From: Prasinococcaceae sp. CCMP 1430 | Lineage: Eukaryota > Plantae > Prasinodermophyta | Assembly: GCA_013416795.1 (NCBI GenBank) | Contig: RQSC01000015.1 | Span: 105,696 to 169,695, forward strand | DNA: 64,000 nucleotides | Direction of reading: 5' to 3' | Shown here: piece by piece, positions 1 to 53,770 of the stretch | Position numbering within the stretch: the stretch's first letter is position 1 | Layout: every line of letters begins with the position of its first letter | The notes under the pieces: model-generated | The model's database searches: none | What the model saw: the letters and a program-made list of their open reading frames with translations, nothing else | Told to the model about the DNA's origin: nothing | Made by a program: the position numbers and the translations under genes

Positions 1-797
<797 letters not shown>

Positions 798-13954: not shown

Positions 13955-15418
13955 CTAGGCTGACAGCGCCACCCTGAAGCTCATTCGTCCGAGGTCATGG
14001 AAGAGTCCACCTTCCAAGCACGGCTGCAAGAAGTACGGCGCGGTGGGCAAGAGGATAAGAGACACCACCGCCGTCGCGACCACCTGAGGCATCGCACGTC
14101 CGATTGCAGCGCCCACGCGCGTGCGTTGCAGCAGCGCCTGGCCAAGTGTAAAGGGTAATTGCAGAATGAAGAAGGTCAGCACCGTTCCCGGCGCGTAACC
14201 TGGGAAAGCGACCAACCATGCGTACTCGTGGAAGAACCCCGACGACAGGAACGCCGCCAGCGACGCCAGCGACGCCGGCACGCCGCTGTCCTTGAGCGGA
14301 ACGAACACCGTTCGACGAATGAGGCCATGGACGAGCAAGTTCCAACGCCGCCCCCAGAACTGCTGCGGGCTGGTCGAAAGCAACAGCGGGGACCTGAAGA
14401 GTGTGATAGGCGAGTGCCCGCCCGCAAGCAAAAGCAGGCTGAAGACGTCGAAGCCCATGGATAAGAAGAGGAATATCAACCACGTCTGGGCGTACGAATT
14501 GACCAGCTGCTTGTACGAGCCAACAGGAGCGGCTGAGTACGGGTTGTAGTAGCTTCGAGAGCCAGCACTGCCGGCAGACCCGGCGCTCGAATATACATAT
14601 GATTCCACGCTTGCGCCAAGTGCCAGGTACTCCCTCGGGTGCAGCCAGCTGCACAGCAACGACAGGAACACGAAACGGGCAAGCATGGAGCGCGCGAGGC
14701 GCCCCAGCTCGCCCCTGCGGGCGCGTGCAGGAAGACCCGCCGTGTCAAAACGCGCCTCCACCGGCGATGCGAGCAGCAGCAGCGTGGTCATCCTCAAACC
14801 CACATTGCCATGCTCTCCTGCACGCCCTTCGGCCTCACTGCTCCCGCCGCTGTCGCCGCCGTTGCGGTCCTCCCCTGCGCCGCTCCCACCGCTTGTGCCG
14901 GAGGACGACGTCCGTGGCGCGGCTCCGAAGCATCGCGCGTGCGAACGCACCCCTGAGTACGGTCGGTGGCGGAGTATATGCGCGGTCCGTGTGTGTATAC
15001 GCTACTGCCGCGAGCGGTACGCGCCCTCGACGTGCCCGCGTCACAGTCGACGTGGTCACAAGCAATGACTGCACTCAGCGCGCACGCGCGCGTGCGATGC
15101 GCAGGCGTACTGCGTGCACGGCGCACGCACCGTGCGCAACGAGCGCTGCAGCAAGGGTGGCACCGCAACAATCGCGCCGATGCACAGCGCGGGTAGCAGC
15201 ACGTCCTGGGCGAACTGCATCCAGCGCGGGTGACGCACACCCCTGCCACTCCCATCCTTCTTGGCTGCCGCATCTCGGCGCTTGCGCGCGCCTGTGCCTG
15301 CGGCCGCCGCCACGCCCGCGCACGCAAGCGTCGCCGCCGAGACGCACAGCACCGCCGCGATGGCCTCCACCCACAGCTCGCCGTCCGGCGGGTGCAGCGT
15401 GAGACGCGGAGCGCGCAT
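13955..15418 (-). CDS. MBOAT (wax synthase-like) membrane-bound O-acyltransferase, multi-exon
   Basis: FRSPLLLSTSPQQFWGRRWNLLVH and AFLSSGFFHEY (catalytic Asn/His), multiple TM segments; first exon starts MRAPRLTLHP at 15418. Confidence 0.88.
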
Positions 15419-15846
15419 GGCTCGCGCCGGCCGCGCCCTCTGGGCAGCAGCCGGCCGCCGCCGCGCGCTGCGCGAACGGAGCAGGGCCCCTCCTAGCCCC
15501 CACTTTTGCGCTCTCAGTCGCTCCCCCCCCCCCTTGCCCCGCCACCCCAGCCCGCCCTCCGCGTGGCGTGTGGGGGCCCCCCAGTGCATCCCGTCGTGCG
15601 CGCGCACCTCGCCCCACTGAAACCGACACGCGATGCACCCCCGTCCGTTTCTGCGTCGTGGGACCCCCAGCCAGCGTGCCACCCCCGTCCAATGATCCAC
15701 CATCGGCCGCAAGGGTGGAGGGAACAGTGCGGGGAAAGGACTTCTTCCCCGGCCATACATCCACGTTTTGATGCTGTGGCGAGTCCGCGGACGGCGACGC
15801 GGGCGCCTCGGACCAGCCGACGAGCGCGCGTGCGCGCGCGCGCGAG

Positions 15847-18800
15847 GTGAGAGTCGCGCGGTCCGCGGCTGGCGCTGACTTCCACGAGGCCATCCGTCGC
15901 GCGTTCGCCAGCCACTCGGCGGAGCTGGACAAGGACCTCACGGTGCACGATGTCAGCGGCGCCGAGGTGCGCTCGGCTCGCGACGCGGAGGCGGCAATGG
16001 CGCGGACGAGGAACGCGCCGCTGCTGCTTCGCGTGGGCGGACGGCTGGTGCGCCAGGTGTCCGACCGAATCCAATTCATCCCCGATGCCAAGGCGTTGAC
16101 GCAGGCCGGCGCGTATTCGTACGCCGTGACCGAGGGGCGCATGGAGCTCACCTACCAGCTGGCGGAGCTCATCGACAACTCGTTGCGCGCCATCAGGGTA
16201 CGCAGGGAGGAGCATCCCGGCGCTGACGCGTCCGATGAGGGCACTGTGGTCGTTGGGATCCACAGGCGGAAGGAGGGTAGCGGATGCGCCATCTGCATCG
16301 AGGATGACGGCGTGGGCATGGATCAGACCGACGTCACCAACTGGGCGACGCTCCACTATTCGATGGAGGACAGGGGCTTGCTCGAGAAGGTCAATCCCAA
16401 TGGCCCACACCCTGAAAAGTACCTGAGCGGCAACACCTCCTACTACGGCGTCGGAGGCAAGCACGCGAGCTTTGGCATCGCCCGCGACGTCAAGCTCATC
16501 ACCAAGAAGGCCGGCCAGCCGATGGTGTGCGAGGTGGAGCTCATTCAGGACACGCTCGAGGAACAGACGAAGCAGGGCGTCCGGGCGGAGGACAAGTACA
16601 CCGCCGGCACGAAGTGGCGCGACCTGTGTGACAAGTCGAGCCAGGGGGAGGTCGAGCTGTCGTACGGCGCGCTGGCGCGAATGGTGGCGCTGGAAGGTCC
16701 TGGGCGCAAGCGCCGCGCCGACGGTGTGCGCAGCGCGGTGGCCCGCAGGGTCCGGAGCAACTACCAGACGGAGGACATCGAGGACGCCGACTCAGCCGAG
16801 GCGGAGGGAGGGGAAGCCGCCGCCGCCGCCACCGGACCTGCTGCCGAAGGGAAGGGCGGCGACGGCCCCGCCGACGACTTGACCGCGGCTGCGGCCTCGC
16901 TGGAGCAACAGAATGCGGTCTGCTTCACCCGCCTGGTCCTGACGAGGATCAAGGATCACGTGCCGCCAGAGCTTGGAGATCCGAAGTCCGACGCGTCGAT
17001 GCAGCTCACGCGAGACCTCGCGCACGTGTACCACTACTACCTGCATGGGCCCGACGGTAACAAGTGTGAGGCGGCGGGCGGTGCCTCCGCGACGGAGGCA
17101 GCCACGCAGGTGACTCTCGGCACGCAGGCCTCGCGCCCGAGGCAGAGTGCCCTGCAGCCGACGGTCATTCCGGAGTTGCTCCTTCGATGGTACGGCAGGG
17201 ACGGAGAGATCGTGCACGAGGATGACCTGCGCGACATCAAGTCGAACCATCCCAACGGCGTCAAGCGCGTCGAGGACCCGGAGACGCAGTACCTGCGCGC
17301 GGCCAAATCGACCTTCAAGTTCACCATCCAACCTCTTAATAGGACTCCGGCGATTATCGAGCTGCGCTACTACCCGTTTGACCAGCACCGGGAGACGATG
17401 CCGTCTTCGGACCTCCACATCTGTGCTGACCCGTCGGATGACGAGGGCGCCGACGATGACAACGTGGCGCTGGCAGACAGGGCGCTCAGCGGGACGGGCG
17501 TGGGTGCGGGCAGCAGCGGCAGTCACGCGAACGGCGGGGGTGTCGTTGGCATGCCGAAAGCGAATGGTCGTCGCGCATCCAGAATGATCGACACGTGGTG
17601 GGTCGGGCGCCACGTGCCCGAGCACCATCTGAGCGCCCTCAGCTGGATGAGCGAAGCGCTAAACGCGAGCGACAAGGTCAGCCCCTTCGTCGCGGATCGC
17701 ATCCACGGATCGATGTGGGTTGGCGCCGACTACAAGCCTTTTGCGAACAAGCTGAAGCTCAACGAGGATCTGCCAGCCCTGCTTACGTCTGCCGGGGCGA
17801 GCATCCGACCGCGCGACGCCAAGAGCGCATTTTTGAAGTGGGCGGAAGAATGCCACCGGGAGCTCGACAAGGTCGTGATGTACACAGACAAACTGCCGGC
17901 AGAGGCCCAGGATGTTGCAGGCATGACGCGCTTCGGCGCCTGCTCTGTGCAGAGCGAGGGAGGCGGCGCCAGCACGCGCGCGGAGGGCCTCCTCAGGGTT
18001 GGTGACTGCGTGAAGATCCCCAAAGCCAGAGGCAGGTCCGAGGTCGTGGGCAAGGTGAAGAGTTTTCTAGTCAACGGCAACCACGACCACCCCAAGTGCA
18101 AGGACGGCTCACATCACGTCAACGGCGAGGTGGAATTCTTGCCTCCAAAGTCGCGCGAAGGCGTGCCGTCCCCGAACCCTGTGCGCAAGAAGCTCAAGGA
18201 CATCGAGCGAGCTACTGAAAAAGAGTACCGGGCCTATGCGAAGAAGCTCGTGCAGGCGCTTCCGCAGGGCCTGAGCGTCACATTCGACCCGACGTCTGGC
18301 AGGGCTCACCCCTGCCCACCTCTCTCTCTGTCTCAGTCCAAGGTGCCAGAGCACTCCTGCGGGTACCAGCTGCCTGAGATTTTCGTCCAAGTGATGGCTG
18401 AAGGCAACAAGCCGACCGCGAAATTTGTAGGCACGGACGAGAAGTGCATCGTCGTCATGCGCTTCGGGGAGCTCGACGAGGTCAAAGGCGAATTCGTCAA
18501 CAACGAGTTCTCCACAGTGGAGAACGCCGCGCCATTCAAGGGCAAGAATGCAAAGCACGTGCCGCCCATGGCCTACACATTTAACCCTCCGCCTCCGATC
18601 ACCGAGGCGGGCGCATACCGCCTGGAGTTCATTCTGAAGGACTACGAGGAGCATTTCGTCAAGGGGAGGTTCGACTTCAAGGTGGCACCATCGCGTGCGA
18701 CCGGGTTTGTTGTGCGTGCAGCCAGTGGCGACAGCGTCGGGACCTGCATTCCTGACCGTGCACTCGAAAGACGGAAGTTCCTCCCTCTGGACGCGGACTC

Positions 18801-21800
18801 GCTGGGTGCCGTCGTCATTGGCACGCCGATTCCGAGCTTCGACGTCTGCTTCGTTGACGACCACGGGAACAGCGTCAAGGACGCTACACTCGGTTACGAA
18901 ATGCTCGAGGAAGACCTGATCAGCATCGAAGAGGTGACCACTCCAAAGGACAGCGATGTGCCCGGCCTCAGGATCAAGTATGCCGGCGCTTGGCACGACG
19001 GTGGCGTTTATCGCGTGTCGGACTGCACGCTCTCGTACGACACGGATCCGACGGGCACCCCTGCGTCAAAGCTGCCGCCCTCAGGCACGCGATACACGCT
19101 CAAAATTTCTGCGCGACAAATCATCAAAGATGCCACAAGCGACGTGCCTTTCATGGCCTTCCCTGGGTTGCCATCGCGCGTCGTTTGCGACCAGCCCGCG
19201 CTCACATGCGACTCGGGCACGGCTCTCGAGGACGTGCTCGTCACGCTCAAAGACGTGAAGAACGCGCATGTCTCCATGGCCGCGCTCGCAGAGCTCGGCC
19301 TCGCGTACAGCATCCAGGCCGTCGTAGAGGGCGAGGTTGTGGGCACGGCATCCCTGAACGACGATGGCACCGCGCACGTCAAGGGGGCGGTGATTGATGG
19401 CGCGCAGCGCGACACGGTCATGGAATTCCGGATTTCCGTTGCTAAGGCGGTCGGCAGAAAGAATACGAAGGAGCTCAAGGCCGTCATCGCTGAGGCCAAG
19501 AAGTCAATTGAGGATGGCAAGAAGTCAATCGAGGGCGCGCCTCTGAGCCAAGTCCCGGTCAAGGTCGGAGCGAGCAGGGCGCCGGCCAGGCTCGCGCTCA
19601 TCCTCGCGGGCGAGGAGTTGCCGGGAACAGAGCTGCAGGAGGGTGCAGGCTGGGAAGAGATCCACACGAGCATCAGTGACGTGCCAGTCAACATGCCCAT
19701 CACTAACTTGAGCCTTCGCGTCTACGACATGGCAGGCCGTGAGGTGAAGGACTTCAACGACAAGAGCCAGCCGTGGAGTGCTGATGAGCTGCAGATGTCG
19801 TGGAAGGAGGGCACGACCGTCGCCTACAAAGCGTGTGCATCGGACGGCAGCCTGAAGCTTCACGACATCGGAACGGACATGCTCGGCCGGGAGACGGGTC
19901 GCAAGATGCTGTGGGCAAAGTTGAAGGGAGGGCGCGGCCGCCCGACGCTCAAAGTTAACATCGAGGTCCGCAAAAAGCCCGGTCTCGCTGCGCAAATGGC
20001 ACTCACCCTGCGCGCTGGCAGGCTCTCCGATGGCGTCGTGGCGACGCAGAGGAGCGGTGGCCGATCGAATAGGTCTCTACCATCAAGCGACACCACCCGG
20101 TGTGGCGAGCCTTTCGTGGTCGAGGTGGCCATCGAGGACAAGGACGGGAACCCCTGCACCAGGCTACCTGTGCTGGAAGAGGTGTGGCGCGCTTTATCGC
20201 CGGCCCATACGTAGCGCGCGAGGCGTCGGCGCCGGCGTCCTGAACCGCGAGCTGCGCGCGCGCGCGCGCGCGCTGACCCGCCACCGGCTCGCGCCCCCGC
20301 AGCGAATGATGTGCGACAATGAATCCAAACGTCTCCTCAGGATCGTGAAGACACCCAACACTGCAAGCAATCCCGTCGACTTCAAGAAGTCCGATGGGCG
20401 CTGGATCTCCAAGAACGGGGGGGACATCTTCGAGATCGAGTTCACGCTAAAACACACAGTGGGACCATTCACAGTGAAGGTCCAAAAGGTCGTCATCGAC
20501 GCCGACGATGAGCATGGCAAGAAAAAGAAGAAGAAGAAGGCCAAGCATGTCATCGAAGGTGACGAGTGGACGGAGACGTTGATGGCCGGCAGGCCGACAG
20601 GCTTGAAGGTGTCCATCGAGGGTGTGGCCAGAGGTGACAGCACCCTGAAGACGATCATCGGCGGCCCCTTGAAGCCCTTGGTCATCAAGGCCGTGGACGC
20701 GCGGGGCAGCGTCGCCGATACGGCAAACTTCGAGGTTGCCATCGAACCTCGGGCCGAGCCCATCGGCGACCCGCAGGGTAGGACGGCAGCGACCATCACA
20801 GTGGCAAAGAAGAGCAAGGGCAGAATGCGCGGCAACCTCAAAGACGGCATGCTGAGGATATCCGGCCTCGTGCTGGCCGCTGCTACCGCACCAGGGGCCT
20901 ATGGTCTCAATGTGGTCGTCAGGCGAGGCGGTGGCGACGTCACCGCGAATTGGGAACCGGCGCAGGTGACGCTGGAAGCAGCTGAGCCAAACACGGTCGA
21001 CGCGCTCGGCGTGCTGCTGTTGCCGCCCGGTCAGACGCCCGGGCCGAACACCGCGGCCATCTCCCAGCCGGCACAAGCAGAGTCGGCGAACGCGAGTTTC
21101 GCCGCGGGTGACAATTTGACGGCTTGGGTGGAGTGCAAGTGCCGCGGCGTGAGTCCTCCTGAGGTGGAGCTCGACCCCTCAGCAGCAGGTGCGTCCTCGG
21201 GCGGGGGTGGCGGGCCGCGCCAGACATTCCCTTCGACGCTCGACACGATTGAGATGACACAGACCTTGCGGGAGGCACCCGTGTCCGCCATGGACATCGT
21301 CAATGGCGCGTGGCGAAAGCCCAAGCTGGCCCTCCGACTCAAGTGCACGCACTACGAGCCGCCAGATGGCGATGGGACGAGGCCGCCCCCGAAGAAGCGA
21401 GCTCGCCGCGGCCAGAAGCTTCCCGATCCCCTCGATCTGCTGCCCTGCGCCAAGCCCTTGCAGGCTGACGGGCGATGGTTCTTCAAATTCGAGCTGCCCC
21501 CTGCCCTTGTGCTGCGCCACCCAGGGCGTTGGACAGCAACCGCTGAGTACATCGAGGCACGCGCGGATCTGCTCGATGCGCTGCCAAAGGACCAGTTGAA
21601 GCGCACGAGCACCGCGCAAATCCTCGAGGTCGTGCCGGGGAAACCCGCCAAGCTCGTCGACCATGGCGATCTGGCCAGGCAACGGGGGCTGCTGTGTGTC
21701 AGCGACGGTGCCGCCGCCCCCGAACCGCGCGTGATCGCGAAGGATGTGGCCGTCCGCGTGCTGGACGCCAATGGCAACGCCTGCAACAGCGGCGGTGTCG

Positions 21801-23554
21801 CAATTCAGGCCTGGCTGGAGCGTCCTGCCGAGAGCGGGCCCCAGGCGCCGTCGCACCTGCTCGCGCTCGAGACCGACGAGGATCGCGCCGGCGTGAAGGT
21901 GCTGGAGGAGGCGGATGGGGCGGTGCGGCTCGTGGTCGCATCCGACGACAGTGGCGTTGCCAGCTTCGGCGCGATGAGGGTGGCACCCGGAGCTGCGGGC
22001 GGGGCGGACTGCGAGGCGACGCTTGTCTTTGCCCTGCTCGAGGAGCAAGGCGCGCGCCACGAGCGTAAGGTGGAGATCACCAGCGCGACCGCTTTGGTAC
22101 TCGAAGGCGTGGTCGGCGAGAAGCGCGCACGGGCAGAAGCCGAAGCACAGGTGGTTGCCGAGAAGCGTGCGAGGAAGGAAGAGGAGGTTCTGCTTACGCA
22201 GCGCCGCGACGATTGTCGGAGGGCTGAGGAAGAGCTGCGCAGGGCTGAGGATGAGCTACGCGAGGCCAAGCGCGGCGTCAGGTCTGCTCGCAAGCAGGCC
22301 GTCGACAGCCGTGTGCCGAATCACATCGTGAAGCGCTTGACCGACCTCGAGGCTGCGCGCGCGGAGCTGAGAGTCCACAAGGAAAAGCTCGAGGCGGAGC
22401 AGGCAGCAACCGCGGCGCTCGGTGGCACCGAGCCTCCTCGGATGTGCATTCGAAAGCCGCAGTGGGCGCCTGGTCCAAACGGCGCGGCTGATGAGCCGAG
22501 ACCATTCGCGCAAGGGAGGCTCGACCCGCGGGGCGACCCCTCCAGAACTGGCATTGCGCGCGGCAGGTTCATTGCTGACCTCAGGGACCAGCGCGACAAA
22601 GCGTGGGCGCAGGGGCTAAAGCCTGACGGTGCCGAGGCGATGTTGCACGGCGTCGGCTTCGAGCTACTCGTCGCGCGAAACAACGACCCGGCCGTGAAGA
22701 AGCTCGTCGAGCTCCTCTTCAAGACTCAGCTTCAATACCTCATCGTTCACACCAACGAGCAGAAGGAGGCGATCAAGCACATGTGGGACGAGAAATGGAA
22801 GGACCGCGCTCCGAAGGACCAGTGCCCGAGCATCCTCAGTATGGATACCCAGCCTTCCAGGCCGCCGGTTAGTGGTGAGCAGCTGCAAGGTTGTGAGGTA
22901 GCGGCAGACTACCCGTGGCCGTGGCCGCACTATAAGGCTGACGACCTGAGCACCGACGAGAAGAGGAAGGCGCCGCCCGGATGTCGTGGCTACCTCTTCA
23001 ACCTCGTCGATCCCTCCTCGCAATTTCCGAGGGGCTCTCAGCCGAACGGCAAGGACATGCGCGTCGCCATCAAGGCGATGGTTGGCCCTACGCTCGTCTT
23101 CAAGGACTCGAAGTCGATGAACAGCTACCGCAAATTCTGCGTGAGCAAGCGTGTGGGCTGTCCGAACCTTGTCTGTACGGGCAGCTTCGAGCGGCTGGAC
23201 AGCAGCGGCATCACCCATTTCATGGCACGGGAACCAGAGAAGGTCGCGCTCCTCGGCACGCTCGACCTGAGGGCGGATGGTGCTGCTGGCGGGGACATCG
23301 TTTCGGCCGCGGGCGCGGGCGAGGGTCCGAGCAGCAGCGGCCCCCGGGCAGGGCGGGCGCGCGGCACACCCCTGGTGCAGATCGTAGAGTCCTTGCGATG
23401 GGTCGTCGACAAGTACGAGCTCCTGGAAGACGCGCAGCAGGCGCACGAGGACGCGGAGCAGGCCCTCGCTGAGGCGCAGCGGACTGCCGGGGACAGCGGC
23501 GCTGGCTCTGGCGCGGGCGCGGGGGCGAGCAAGCGCTCGCGCCGCCAGCAGTAG
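15847..23554 (+). CDS. SMCHD1: SMCHD1-like protein (GHKL ATPase, transducer/BAH-like region, beta-rich linker, coiled coil, SMC hinge); join(~15847..20181,20303..23554), true start not resolved
   Basis: YQLAELIDNSL, IEDDGVGM, SYYGVGGKHA, RDLAHVYHYYLHG, LRYYPFDQHRETMP; coiled coil at ~22100-22400; hinge-like GYLFNLVD...PTLVFKD...GCPNLVCTGSFERLDSSG. Phase-0 intron at 20182-20302. Confidence 0.88.
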
Positions 23555-23668: not shown

Positions 23669-24530
23669 CTAGCTGCCTCGCCTACACAGTGTGACCCTCG
23701 CGCCGCCGCCGCGAGCTCGCTCGTTCACGCCCAGCACCTCGAGCCGCCCGACGCCGCGCACGCTCAGCACGTCGCCCTCTCGCACGCCCGCCCCCGCGCG
23801 AGGTGCCTCGTCGCCCCAGTTGAGCCGCACGCCGCCGCGCTTCGCCATGAGCTCGGCGGCGCCCGCGCGGGAGAGCTTGAGTCCCGCCGCGAGCACGGCG
23901 TCGAGCCGTGGCGGCATGCTGCCCACCGCAACGTCGAAGGGCTCCCCGCGCTGCGGCGGGGGCACCTCGGCGAGCGCGCGCTCGTACGGCAGCGCCTCGG
24001 CGTGCACGCGCACGCCTCGCACTCGAAGCTCGCCCTCGCAGCCCCCGTGCGAGAGCACTTCAGCGGTGGTGGGGTCGCACACGACGTACGCCGCAGGCGC
24101 ATCCTTCGCCTTGGAGCGCGCGCCGGTGTCCACGCACTCGTCGACCACAACCACGTCGCCGAGCTTCGCCCTGCTCAGCCCCTCGCCGCTGCACAGCGCG
24201 CCAAGGAAGTCGCGCTGCGTCGCGCTCGCGAAGCGAAAGTCGCCGTACAGGCCAACCACGCAGACGAAGTCGGCCGCGGCTGCGGGTGCGAGCACCAGCG
24301 CGCCGCACGGCTCCGCGCCGTCCCCCTCCTCCCCCGCGCACATGGCCTCGAGCACCTCCGCCCTGCCCGCCACCAGCCGCTGCCGCTCGGCATCGACGCG
24401 TCCGCCGACGCGCGCGTAGCGCACGTCTGCCAGCTGCGCGAGCGCCGCCTCGGCCTCGGCGCGCTCCGGCGGCGTGAGGAAGTCGGTCGCCGCGGCGCCC
24501 CAGTCACGCGCCGCGCGCTCCGCGAGGTCG
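23669..24530 (-). CDS. YlmH/Sll1252-like S4 RNA-binding protein (photosystem II S4 domain type), 5' truncated at N-gap
   Basis: TDFLTPPE, GG..DAERQRL, RDFLGAL..GLSRAKLGDVVV, RLDAVLAAGLKLSR, VRLNW and EGDVLSVRGVGRL. Confidence 0.88.
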
Positions 24531-27353: not shown

Positions 27354-29921
27354 ATGTCGTCGCGCAAGTCATGGCGCAAAGTGTCGAAGCTGGTGTCCGC
27401 CGCGGCGACGCTGTCGCGGCGCGGCTCCGGCACCGACCCCGATGATGACGCCGACGCCAACGCGCGCGCGGGCGAGGACGGCGCCGACACGCGCCCCCTG
27501 GAGCGCCGGCTTGAAGTGGCGCGCACGATCAAGCGGCGCGATGGAAAGTACACAGGGCCGGCAGGGATCGCGTCCTCTAGCGGCGCCTCAACACCACAGG
27601 AGGGCTCGCCCCGGTCGTCGCGGAGGTGCGCGGGCGCCGGCAGGGCACGCACCGCGAGTTCGCGAGCCCCGGCCGTGCGTGCGCTCCGCGCGTCGTGCTC
27701 GTGCACACGCGCGCGCACACACACGCACGTCTACACGGGCGTGCTCGCCTCGCGCGGCCACGCGCGGGAGTGCACGCTTTTGTGCTGACTGGTCTATGCA
27801 CACACTGCACACGGACACGTTCGCGCACACGCGCTCACGGTCGCCCGCGCGCGCGCGCCCAGGGCGTCTGCGGCCGTGCTGGGGGAGCTCGTGGTGGGCT
27901 CGGCGCCGCCGCGCGTGATCCGCTGCGACGCTGACTGGAAGAACGCGTGGGACTGGGGCATCATCGTGCTTATCCTGTACAGCGCCATTGTCGTGCCATG
28001 GGAGTTTGCCTTCCAGCGCACGCCCAACCACTTGCTGGAGACCGTTGACTACCTGGTGGACGTCCTCTTCCTGGCGGACACCGTCATGTGCTTCTACACG
28101 TCCTTCATGGACTCGCACGGCGTGGAGGTGCTGGAGCTGCCCGTCATCCGGAAGCGGTACCTGCGCGGCTTCTTCCCAATCGACCTCCTCGCGCTCATCC
28201 CTTTTGAGCTGATTGTCAAGGCCTCCAAGGCCAACGTGCAGCTTAACCTGCTGCAGCTCATTAAGCTGCCGCGGCTGCTGCGCGTGAGCCGTCTCATGAA
28301 GCGGCTCGACATGTTCACGACCGCGAACTTCCTGCGCGTCATCAAGCTGCTCTTCGGCTTCTTCCTCTTCTCGCACTGGATAGCATGCGCGTGGTTCTTC
28401 CTGGGGCGCTACCAGGAAGAGGGAAACGTCTGGACGGGGTCGGTGTGGCTGGTAGACGCCGACCTGTGCCAGACGGTCCGTTCGGAGGGCTACCTCGACG
28501 AGCTCACCGGCGAGTACGCATTCCACCCGGACAACGAGCGGGCGCAGCCCTACGAGGTCGACCACGTGGCGCACTGCGTGGACCGCAAAGATCACCCCGA
28601 GTGGTACATTTCCGAAGAGCACCTCGTCGAGGCGCAGACGGCAAACGGCGATACCGTGCTGATTCGCCCGGACGCCTCGGTGCTCACGCAATACATCACC
28701 AGCCTGTACTGGTCGCTGGTGACACTCACCACGGTGGGCTATGGCGACATCTCCCCGGCCACCAACACAGAGCGTGTCTTCACGGTGATGGTGATGCTCA
28801 TGGGCGCTATTATCTACGCCTCCATCTTTGGCAACGTCGCCGTGCTCATTCAGAGCTTTGACATGGCCCAAGCCCGCTATCAAGACCGAATCAACCACCT
28901 CAAGGAATTCTGCGCGCTGCACGAGGTGTCCGAGGGCGTGCAGGAGCGCATCCTTCGCTACGCTGACCGCATCTACCTCCAGACGCACGGATTCCACATG
29001 CGCGAGATGCTCGCCGATTTTCCGTCCACTGTACGGCGCGACATCATGCGCGACGTGCACAAGACATTCGTTGCCAACCTCAAGCACGCCAGCCCGTACC
29101 TCGGCGAGAACGAGTTTTTCATGGAGAGTCTGCTGCTGCGCCTGCAACCGCAGGTTTGTCTCTCGGGCGACTACGTCGTCAAGAAGGGCGAGGTGGGTCA
29201 TCACACCTACTTCATCAAGTTCGGTGCGCTCGAGGTGGTGCTCGAGGACGACCAGCGCGGCACCAACGCGGCGCTGGGAGCCATCCTTCTAGGCGCCGGC
29301 GAGCACTTCGGCGAGGCCACGCTGCTGCGCTCTAAGCGGCGTACGACGTCGGTGCGTGCGCGAATCTACTCAGAGCTTTTCTACCTCGACCGCGATGACT
29401 TCCGCGCACTCAAGACCGACTATCCCCATGAAGTCAACGTCTTCGTACAGGTGGCCGTTAAGCGCATCAACGCCGCGCAAGCGGCCCTCGAGCGCGAGCA
29501 CGAGTTCGAAGACGCTACCGTTGGCGCCAACGGCAATGCTGCAGACCCCAACGTCCTCGACGCCGGCGACGCGGACACCCTCGGGTGGCGACATTCCGAC
29601 GGCACTGACAGCTCCACGGGCGGCTACCGCGAGTCCTTTGACGACGGGCGCGACTTCCGCCGCCGTCGAAGCGTTTACCTTGGCGGCATGGGCGATGGGG
29701 TGCTCAAGACGCTCGCTGCCGGCGGCGAGAACGTGCTCAGGCTCTTTGCTGATGACGAGCTCAAGGCGATCACCGGCGAACGCGTGGGCGACGACACGTT
29801 CGAGCCAGAGACGCACCCAATCACGATTCGTTGTGGGGCACAGCAATGTGAGAGGGGCGCCGCGCTTTCGTTTCGACCTGCATCAAAAAGTCGCCCGTGG
29901 GGTGATGTGACGCGTGAGTGA
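27354..29921 (+). CDS. Cyclic-nucleotide-binding-domain potassium channel (EAG/KCNH/CNG-like); join(27354..27625,27863..~29921), 3' end uncertain
   Basis: S4 LIKLPRLLRVSRL, HWIACAW, pore YWSLVTLTTVGYGDI, C-linker, CNBD GEHFGEA...RRTTSVRA. In-phase intron at 27626-27862. Confidence 0.93.
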
Positions 29922-52261: not shown

Positions 52262-53233
52262 TCACGCCTGCACCAGCGCAAAGGTGCCGCGACCTTCCTC
52301 GGAGTCAAAGAAGAAGGCGTTCTCCATCGTGCGGCCCTTCTTGCTCACAGCCTTGACAAGCTCTTGAGCGACAATGCCACCCACCACGGCACACACGGGA
52401 GACAGCTCGACTCCAGCTGCGGCCATCACGCTTGCTGCTGCGTCGAGTACGGGCTGCTTGTCAAAGCCAGCGGTCTTGGCGGCGGCCGCCGCCGCCTCGG
52501 CTGTGCACGCGTCCGCCGGGAGGCCACCGGGCCCGATCTCCGCGGCAGCCTCGGCGCCACCCACAGCGCGCATCGCGCCGAAACAGGGGCTGATTTTCCT
52601 CGGCAGGTCCTTCCAGGGCCCGCTGAAGGCACGCTCTAGTGAGGGATACTCAATTGTTGCCTCATTCCATTCGGTGACCTCCTCGCCGTCCTTCATCTCC
52701 TTCTTGGGCTCGGAGAACGTGTGTTTGGCACCGAGGTCGCAGATCGCCTCGCCGTACCCACCACGGACGTCGACCACGAAGAGCATTGTGCCCGCGGAGC
52801 GGCAGGCCGCCGCCAGCGCAGATGCTTCGGCCACCGACAGCCGCGTCGCCACCACCGCCGTGTACTCCTCGACCGATGAGAGCACGGCAGCGCTATCGAC
52901 AGCCTCCACGCTCACCATCGGATTCATCGCAGCCAGCGTCTCCACGCACGCCTGCGCAGCGGAGAACCCACCGCCACGCGCGCGCTGCGCTGCATCCACA
53001 AGGAAGTTCGCGGCGGGAGCATCTGCAGCCACTCCAGGTGCACCGAGCCGCACGGCGCCGACGCCAGCGAGTGTCACGTTCTTCGCGATTTCGGCGGCGA
53101 CGCCAGTCACTGGGCCAGCGAACAACACTCGCGATTGCGTGAGGTTGCGCTGTGCCTCGACGCCCCACACGCGGATCTGACGGTCGTACACCTTCTGCTG
53201 CTCCTCGTTGAGCTCGGCGGCATCAGCGGCCAT
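52262..53233 (-). CDS. SAE1: SUMO-activating enzyme subunit 1 (SAE1/Aos1)
   Basis: YDRQIRVWGVEAQ, AEIAKNVTLAGVG, AMNPMV and ELSPVCAVVGGIVAQELVKAVS...NAFFFD. Confidence 0.93.
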   Translation of the reverse strand: MAADAAELNEEQQKVYDRQIRVWGVEAQRNLTQSRVLFAGPVTGVAAEIAKNVTLAGVGAVRLGAPGVAADAPAANFLVDAAQRARGGGFSAAQACVETLAAMNPMVSVEAVDSAAVLSSVEEYTAVVATRLSVAEASALAAACRSAGTMLFVVDVRGGYGEAICDLGAKHTFSEPKKEMKDGEEVTEWNEATIEYPSLERAFSGPWKDLPRKISPCFGAMRAVGGAEAAAEIGPGGLPADACTAEAAAAAAKTAGFDKQPVLDAAASVMAAAGVELSPVCAVVGGIVAQELVKAVSKKGRTMENAFFFDSEEGRGTFALVQA

Positions 53234-53770
53234 CGCCAGCGAAGCGGGCCGATCAGCGCCTCACCTCGCCGCGCAGCGCTGCGCCGCGGCCTCCCCGTTC
53301 GGATGCCTGCGCGCCCCGATCCGCGGCGGCGCGACGGCCCGCCCGCCCCCCAACGCGCCCCCCGACCGCGGCCAGAGCGCCACCACCCCGCGGCGTGGCA
53401 CCCCCGCGCCACACGTGTGGCAGCGTGCCGCGCCGCCCTTTTGCCGCCCCGCGGCGCAAAGCCTGCGGAAGCACACGCGGCGGATGCGCGGAGAAAAGTT
53501 GAGCACAACGAAAGCTCGGACCCACAAGTGCTGCGAGGCGAGCACACGAGCCACTCCCGCGCGGCGGCGCGCGGCGGCCTCGGGGGTGAAGAGTACGGGA
53601 GGTGAGGGCGACGCGAGGTCCGGTGGAGGAGGGGCCGCCGGTCGCGCGCCGCAGCGCCGGGGCGCAGCGGCGCCGGCGCGAGCGCACGGGGCGCCGCCGG
53701 GCGCCAGGTGCTGCGCGCCGCGGCGAGGCGCGCCAGGGTGCGTGTGCCAAGAGGGGCGCACGGCGCCGCC

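What the first reader, a model, noticed from the sequence alone, without database searches (positions are those of the whole stretch)
15847..23554. Full-length, animal-like SMCHD1 chromatin ATPase in a green alga
Seen in sequence: two ORFs joined by one clean intron give ~2,530 aa with an N-terminal GHKL ATPase (catalytic Glu intact in LAELIDNS), a long beta-rich middle, coiled coils and a C-terminal SMC-hinge-like domain. From recalled vertebrate SMCHD1 sequence, the similarity goes beyond generic GHKL motifs: RIQFIPDAKALTQAGAYSYAVTEG (cf. [24 protein letters not shown]), LSGNTSYYGVGGK, RDLAHVYHYYLHG, LRYYPF..RETMP, and a BAH-like GKVKSFLVNGNHD...GEV segment. Established: SMCHD1 silences chromatin in mammals (X inactivation, D4Z4), and land plants have related GMI1 and hinge-only DMS3. 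Inference: this alga keeps an ancestral SMCHD1-type silencing or repair module, informative for the origin of SMCHD1, GMI1 and DMS3.
Basis: partly seen in the sequence, partly recalled or inferred. Interest (0 to 1): 0.8.

Follow-up and report, generated by a model that had tools for sequence, protein, structure and literature searches.

The report
Algal copy of ancient SMCHD1 ATPase
This marine green alga has a real, spliced, full-length gene for SMCHD1, the DNA-compacting enzyme that silences the inactive X chromosome in mammals, but similar genes occur in many green algae and other single-celled eukaryotes, so it is an ordinary, fast-evolving member of an old family and not a special animal-like gene.

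Summary
Observation confirmed. Two ORFs are joined by a 121-nt GT-AG intron (20182-20302) that is spliced out in one contig of a probable RNA run, giving about 2,530 aa; the start exon is unresolved. The N-terminal module is SMCHD1-type, not MORC or HSP90 (Pfam SMCHD1_S5; predicted model vs human 6mw7 Z 37.6, next best about 20). All mapped catalytic residues are intact. The C-terminus has no Pfam hit but folds as an SMC hinge (top Foldseek hit: mouse SMCHD1 hinge).

The novelty claim fails. Full-length homologues occur across chlorophytes (Chlamydomonas, Volvox, Chlorella, Ulva; some database-named SMCHD1), and in Klebsormidium, Naegleria, a dictyostelid, a malawimonad, a foraminifer, an ochrophyte and choanoflagellates. 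The ATPase groups with green algae (99/98); a clade with animals is rejected (p-AU 0.0009). Iyer et al. 2008 already noted this ancient lineage, though I found no paper treating algal or protist copies.

Likely mechanism, inferred from mammals: a hinge-dimerised DNA-bridging clamp with ATP-gated heads; silencing versus repair is untested. One oddity: two of three hinge-interface glycines are replaced. GMI1 could not be placed on the tree. The scan had no earlier SMCHD1 note.

The parts
15847..20181 (+). Coding exon A (1,445 codons; 5' end unresolved, a short upstream exon is probable)
   Evidence: partly covered by contigs of probable-RNA run X1 and metatranscriptome X2
15847..16071 (+). Ubiquitin-like (UBL) pre-ATPase region, first strand(s) missing from the readable frame
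   Evidence: aligns to P0001 N-terminus and to position 12 onward of the algal profile; weak score to a UBL-only profile, about 9-12 bits; helix-strand-helix-strand in the model
16078..17070 (+). GHKL ATPase domain; E107 (16165), N111, D153, G157, R176, Y199-G203, T361 match human E147, N151, D184, G188, R207, Y234-G238, T320
   Evidence: Pfam HATPase_c_3 47.7 bits; alignment to 6mw7; residue roles from PMC6620310; positions
17275..17859 (+). S5-fold transducer domain with switch lysine K635 (17749; human K525)
   Evidence: Pfam SMCHD1_S5 74 bits, cut-off 27
17860..18261 (+). BAH-like domain
   Evidence: aligns column by column with the region after the transducer in animal, protist and algal homologues; animal profile hit to residue 748, E 5e-6; beta-rich in model; not fold-searched alone
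18262..20181 (+). Beta-rich linker, first part (Ig-like repeats inferred)
   Evidence: algal profile hit 1119-1439, E 4e-19; algal vs animal profiles colinear over 1,865 columns with off-diagonal repeat hits
20182..20302 (+). Intron, 121 nt, GT..AG, phase 0, CTGAC branch-like site near 20273
   Evidence: skipped in one X1 contig
20303..23554 (+). Coding exon B (1,083 codons plus stop)
20303..22100 (+). Beta-rich linker, second part (Ig-like repeats inferred), with basic NLS-like runs
   Evidence: algal profile hit 25-710, E 2e-38
22115..22417 (+). Coiled-coil helix leading into the hinge
   Evidence: read from sequence; not tested with a coiled-coil predictor
22553..23239 (+). SMC hinge domain; keeps R1867- and G1872-equivalents (23192, 23207), has H and F at mouse G1875 and G1876
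23375..23476 (+). Returning coiled-coil helix after the hinge, then a basic C-terminal tail
   Evidence: read from sequence

Best explanation
The locus is the alga's vertically inherited SMCHD1 orthologue, a fast-evolving member of a family spread over most eukaryotic supergroups. SHOWN here: architecture UBL - GHKL - S5 - BAH-like - long beta-rich linker - coiled coil - SMC hinge - coiled coil; intact catalytic residues; splicing; placement with green algae. INFERRED from mammalian SMCHD1: two chains pair through the C-terminal hinges; hinge and BAH/first Ig domain bind DNA weakly; the long linker lets the dimer bridge and compact DNA or nucleosome arrays; ATP binding closes the N-terminal heads (helped by the UBL swap) and hydrolysis reopens them, tuning residence on chromatin. 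The most likely cellular use is compaction and repression of repeat or heterochromatic regions, probably with a part in break repair. Confidence in orthology is about 0.95, in the clamp mechanism about 0.75, in silencing as the main role about 0.5.
For: Pfam SMCHD1_S5 and HATPase_c_3 above cut-off. Best PDB sequence hit human SMCHD1. Predicted N-terminal model: Foldseek E 6e-27 to 6mw7 against 1e-8 for MORC3; VIA Z 37.6, rmsd 2.7, 400 aligned, against about 20 for HSP90/MORC. Hinge: profile grown from animal seeds without the window protein finds it at E 2e-5 then 3e-10; algal-only profile hits mouse SMCHD1 hinge E 4e-15, DMS3 6e-8; model's Foldseek top five are 6n64 chains and all top rows are SMC hinges. 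Tree: window plus P0001 with nine green-algal rows at 99/98; animal clade rejected, p-AU 0.0009. Variants in related strains lean synonymous (X9 12 of 18, X2 5 of 6, L002 9 of 13). Mechanism in mammals: PMC4628070, PMC6620310, bioRxiv 10.1101/2025.07.08.663435 and 10.64898/2026.02.05.704097.
Against: No functional data for any algal or protist copy was found. The hinge replaces two of the three glycines whose joint mutation abolishes mouse hinge dimerisation. The position matching the BAH DNA-binding lysine K668 is Asp (approximate mapping, basic residues flank it). The UBL is incomplete in the readable frame. The branch is long (1.7 + 0.7 changes per site), so its exact place inside green algae is unsure. 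LRIF1/HP1-type partners were not searched (no genome-wide tool). Structure models used alignments containing homologues, so they are not fully independent of the profile evidence.
Confidence: 0.72

Rival explanations
1. Same enzyme, but its main job in algae is DNA double-strand-break repair or recombination, as for Arabidopsis GMI1, with silencing being an animal specialisation.
For: GMI1 acts in break repair and mammalian SMCHD1 is recruited to breaks (PMC5651269, PMC4628070, PMC4004971). The family is kept in lineages with very different silencing systems.
Against: Sequence and size are SMCHD1-like, and no GMI1-type protein was recognised among the 150 best relatives. Both animal SMCHD1 and plant DMS3 act in silencing. 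Other agents note Argonaute, HEN1, DRM-type and SRA proteins in this genome (unchecked). The two roles are not exclusive.
Confidence: 0.3
2. A derived variant whose hinge no longer forms the mouse-type homodimer, so it works as a monomer, an ATP-gated dimer only, or with another hinge partner.
For: H and F stand at mouse G1875 and G1876 in both the window protein and its closest relative P0001; G1876 is Gly in 56 of 72 ungapped homologues. Pfam misses the hinge.
Against: G1872 is kept (invariant in 74 of 74); G1875 is Gly in only 24 of 74, and about 16 of 72 homologues from several lineages also lack G1876. The hinge folds confidently, pLDDT above 85 in its core. The mouse test changed all three glycines together.
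Confidence: 0.12
3. The gene was acquired laterally from an animal or another non-green eukaryote.
For: It is far more divergent than other green-algal copies, and scores only modestly better against algae than animals in single-sequence search.
Against: Starred grouping with green algae in three trees; clade with animals rejected; typical GC and intron style for the window.
Confidence: 0.03
4. It is a MORC/HSP90-type ATPase with an unrelated tail, or two separate genes.
For: Pfam gives no hinge or Ig hit for exon B; ESM-Atlas feature search returned only generic HATPase/MORC clusters.
Against: Spliced joint in RNA-type contig; P0001 encodes both halves in one ORF; SMCHD1-specific S5 model, structure scores and hinge fold.
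Confidence: 0.01

Closest known systems
Animal SMCHD1 (human 6mw7 ATPase module, mouse 6n64 hinge)
   Same: Domain order, catalytic residues E147/N151/D184/G188/R207/Y234-G238/T320/K525, BAH-like domain, long beta-rich linker, C-terminal hinge with R1867 and G1872 equivalents.
   Different: About 500 aa longer (low-complexity inserts); about 23% identity in the ATPase module; middle region not detected by an animal profile directly; G1875/G1876 and probably K668 not kept; no X chromosome context; partners unknown.
Chlorophyte SMCHD1-like proteins (Chlamydomonas CHLRE_06g294050, Chlorella sorokiniana and Scenedesmus entries named SMCHD1, Volvox, Trebouxia, Ulva, Tetraselmis, Cymbomonas)
   Same: Same clade, size (2,150-2,830 aa) and colinear homology from UBL to hinge; shared PPGC.GY..NLV hinge motif.
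   Different: The window copy is on a long branch at or near the base of the clade, 25-29% identical to them; lacks their second hinge glycine.
Arabidopsis GMI1
   Same: GHKL ATPase joined to a C-terminal SMC hinge (PMC5651269).
   Different: GMI1 is shorter (about 1,600 aa, from memory) and no such protein was recognised in any of my searches; no sequence was available, so it was not aligned or placed on the tree.
Arabidopsis DMS3 (6ois)
   Same: Related hinge: algal profile E 6e-8, VIA Z 13.6, tied best.
   Different: DMS3 is hinge-only, has no ATPase, and is confidently identified only in angiosperms (PMC4607528).
MORC ATPases
   Same: GHKL + S5 module (Z 17-20).
   Different: No hinge or Ig linker; much weaker match than SMCHD1; window hits SMCHD1_S5, not Morc6_S5.

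Membership tests
SMCHD1 | N-terminal GHKL ATPase with catalytic Glu/Asn, G1/G2 boxes and lid Arg | tested here: met
SMCHD1 | SMCHD1-type S5 transducer with switch lysine | tested here: met
   PF22899 74 bits vs cut-off 27; K635 aligns to K525
SMCHD1 | N-terminal ubiquitin-like domain | tested here: inconclusive
   homologous region present but first strand(s) not located; weak profile score
SMCHD1 | BAH-like domain after the transducer | tested here: met
   alignment with animal/protist/algal homologues; fold not searched alone
SMCHD1 | Linker of tandem Ig-like domains | tested here: inconclusive
   homology shown only through algal intermediates; no Ig_SMCHD1 Pfam hit in this library copy; not folded
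SMCHD1 | C-terminal SMC hinge flanked by short coiled coils | tested here: met
SMCHD1 | Three hinge-interface glycines (mouse G1872/G1875/G1876) | tested here: not met
   only G1872 kept; but G1875 and G1876 vary across the family, so this is not family-defining outside animals
SMCHD1 | Phylogenetic placement among SMCHD1 orthologues | tested here: met
   within green-algal clade 99/98; tree had no MORC or GMI1 outgroup
SMCHD1 | Hinge homodimer, ATP hydrolysis, DNA compaction, gene silencing | not testable with these tools
   needs biochemistry and genetics
MORC | MORC-type S5 and closer structural match to MORC than to SMCHD1 | tested here: not met
   no Morc6_S5 hit; Foldseek 1e-8 vs 6e-27; Z 19.7 vs 37.6
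GMI1 | Groups with land-plant GMI1 | not tested
   no GMI1 sequence retrieved
DMS3 | Hinge-only protein without ATPase | tested here: not met
   ATPase present in the same spliced frame

The most novel reading that the evidence does not exclude
The Prasinoderma-type SMCHD1 is a functionally altered version of a LECA-age chromatin clamp: its hinge has lost two interface glycines and may no longer homodimerise in the mouse manner, offering a natural test of whether hinge dimerisation is needed for SMCHD1 action. The broader by-product, that full-length SMCHD1 is pan-eukaryotic and present in tractable unicellular models, is much more likely true (about 0.85) but was foreshadowed by Iyer et al. 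2008 and is visible in public annotations.
Probability: 0.12. Interest if true: 0.55.

Novelty: new member of a known kind. Interest (0 to 1): 0.3.

Why it matters
SMCHD1 is studied almost only in vertebrates (X inactivation, FSHD, arhinia), and its ancestral job is unknown. This locus extends the family to an early-branching green alga. The survey done here shows the complete architecture in chlorophytes, a streptophyte alga, Discoba, Amoebozoa, Rhizaria, stramenopiles, malawimonads and choanoflagellates. That makes the question 'silencing or repair first?' testable in Chlamydomonas. The window gene itself is not the best vehicle for that: it is among the most divergent copies and the organism has no established genetics that I know of.

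Tried and rejected
Pfam and single-sequence PDB search of exon B found no hinge; profiles and folding were needed. ESM-Atlas feature search of the ATPase gave only generic GHKL clusters. Twenty-five first-exon models, including a frameshift model from the ATG at 15771 read with X, scored 9-12 bits against a UBL profile with no winner. A possible 42-nt intron 15847-15888 was rejected because the skipped residues align to P0001. Three word searches and one full-library search returned no recognisable land-plant GMI1, so the GMI1 relation is untested. Paper searches for SMCHD1 with algae, Chlamydomonas or protists found no study of these copies; the GMI1 paper and Iyer's parasitology review are not held. 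The idea that the lost hinge glycines are unique was rejected. The organism could not be named from my own tool results; the name comes from other agents' notes. The costly full-library search was used once because the 'animal-like' claim rests on absence of relatives elsewhere.
Full report
OBSERVATION. Two long + strand ORFs lie at the stated place: ORF1 open from 15772 to 20214 and ORF2 ending at 23554. Among in-frame GT-AG joins, donor 20182 with acceptor 20302 gives 2,528 codons from 15847. Laying four runs on 14950-20900 showed exactly this 121-nt skip in one contig of run X1, a probable RNA run of the same organism. Contigs of X1 and of a seawater metatranscriptome cover other parts of both exons; contigs show presence, not level. 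A relative from a public sequencing run (P0001, 2,520 aa) encodes both halves in one ORF and aligns over both exons at 32-35% identity, so this is one gene. Strain variants lean synonymous. The start is unresolved: the first in-frame ATG is at 15997, but homology extends to about 15860, and no first-exon model stood out.

THE ATPASE. Exon A hits Pfam HATPase_c_3 (47.7 bits) and SMCHD1_S5 (74 bits), both above cut-off. Its best solved relative is human SMCHD1 (6mw7, E 5e-25). With the chain offset of 18, the window residues E107, N111, D153, G157, R176, Y199-G203, T361 and K635 (counted from 15847) match human E147, N151, D184, G188, R207, Y234-G238, T320 and K525, the residues that PMC6620310 names for catalysis and ATP binding. 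An AlphaFold model of residues 1-810 (pLDDT 76, pTM 0.77) matches 6mw7 at Foldseek E 6e-27 against 1e-8 for MORC3, and VIA Z 37.6 over 400 residues against about 20 for HSP90 and MORC. The segment after the transducer aligns with the BAH region of animals, protists and algae. The position matching the DNA-binding lysine K668 (bioRxiv 10.64898/2026.02.05.704097) is Asp here, flanked by basic residues; this mapping went through a bird sequence and is approximate.

LINKER AND HINGE. A chlorophyte full-length profile matches both exons in order, and chlorophyte and animal profiles align colinearly over 1,865 columns (HHalign probability 100, E 6e-153) with off-diagonal hits typical of repeats. The Ig-like nature of the linker is therefore inferred, not folded. 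Pfam misses the hinge, but a profile grown from four animal hinges, never including the window protein, finds exon B at E 2e-5 and then 3e-10. An alignment without animal rows hits the mouse SMCHD1 hinge at E 4e-15, DMS3 at 6e-8 and a bacterial SMC hinge at 6e-4. The hinge model (pLDDT 76) returns mouse SMCHD1 hinge chains as the top five Foldseek hits, and SMC hinges and DMS3 at Z 10-14 with unrelated folds at 3 or less. The R1867 and G1872 equivalents are kept; G1875 and G1876 are H and F. Mutating all three glycines abolishes mouse hinge dimerisation (PMC4628070), but across 84 homologues only G1872 is invariant, so the departure is notable and not unique.

DISTRIBUTION. Word searches returned full-length homologues from Chlamydomonas reinhardtii, Volvox, Gonium, Chlorella, Micractinium, Trebouxia, Botryococcus, Ulva, Tetraselmis and Cymbomonas, two already named SMCHD1 by their depositors. 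The full-library search found 182 representatives at E up to 0.001. Look-ups named 1,850-2,400 aa members from Klebsormidium nitens, Naegleria lovaniensis, Synstelium polycarpum, Gefionella okellyi, Nonionella stella, Chrysoparadoxa australica and three choanoflagellates; nearly all carry a hinge. The Klebsormidium hinge is closer to mouse SMCHD1 (E 9e-12) than to DMS3 (0.002). No land-plant GMI1 was recognised, so its position is untested; ESM-Atlas clusters of about 1,500 aa and a streptophyte cluster with SMCHD1 domains are leads only.

PHYLOGENY. On the ATPase module, the window protein and P0001 form a long-branched pair inside the green-algal group in FastTree (109 rows), quick IQ-TREE (46 rows, 98) and careful IQ-TREE under LG+C20 (26 rows, longest branches and near-duplicates left out, 99/98). 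Animals group with choanoflagellates. Forcing the pair with animals is rejected (p-AU 0.0009). The trees are unrooted. Some 'green' rows are unnamed environmental proteins assigned by the tree itself. The near-basal position fits the name Prasinoderma coloniale given by other agents (not verified by me) but could also reflect long-branch attraction, as a Helicosporidium fragment was drawn to the pair.

MECHANISM. Shown: architecture, intact active site, splicing, orthology. Inferred from mammals: hinge-linked dimer, DNA binding at hinge and BAH/Ig1, direct DNA bridging and compaction regulated by ATP. Whether the alga uses this for silencing or repair is open; I put silencing slightly ahead because both SMCHD1 and DMS3 serve silencing, while GMI1 and part of SMCHD1's activity serve repair.

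WHAT IS KNOWN. [quoted passage not shown] I found no paper dealing with algal or protist SMCHD1 in the searchable library, which lacks most subscription papers, including the GMI1 paper.

VERDICT. A real, well-supported SMCHD1 gene; a new member of a known kind. The 'animal-like in an alga' surprise disappears once relatives are sampled. Residual interest lies in the under-described breadth of the family and the altered hinge motif. Interest 0.3.

Noticed in passing
P0173 (Klebsormidium nitens GAQ79996.1): A streptophyte alga has a 2,030-aa full-length SMCHD1-like protein on a very long branch that does not group with chlorophyte copies; its hinge is closer to mouse SMCHD1 than to DMS3. It may be the better bridge to GMI1.
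   Followed up: partly
P0126, P0112 (Nonionella stella); P0160, P0228 (Naegleria lovaniensis): Foraminifer and Naegleria each hold at least two full-length copies, so the family has duplicated in some protists.
   Followed up: no
L001:1940-1975: The relative P0001 is also called from a GTG just after a pyrimidine-rich CAG acceptor, suggesting a short missed first exon there too.
   Followed up: partly
window 15419-15847: The gene is head to head with a minus-strand MBOAT acyltransferase gene (13955 to about 15419; Pfam MBOAT), leaving about 430 bp for a shared promoter and the missing first exon.
   Followed up: partly
window 23669-24424 (-): Convergent neighbour that reads like a YlmH/Sll1252-type S4 RNA-binding protein (from memory); no Pfam hit at E 0.01.
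   Followed up: partly
L002 vs window 18330-18331: A low-coverage metagenome contig, 99% identical, lacks two bases in a TC repeat; probably an assembly error, since an X1 contig spans the site without a gap.
   Followed up: yes
   Followed up: partly
window 3-794, 1284-2396, 27789-29918, 52265-53260: Ordinary neighbours: CDC48-type AAA ATPase C-terminus, SLX1-like GIY-YIG nuclease, cyclic-nucleotide-gated channel, ThiF/E1-like protein.
   Followed up: no
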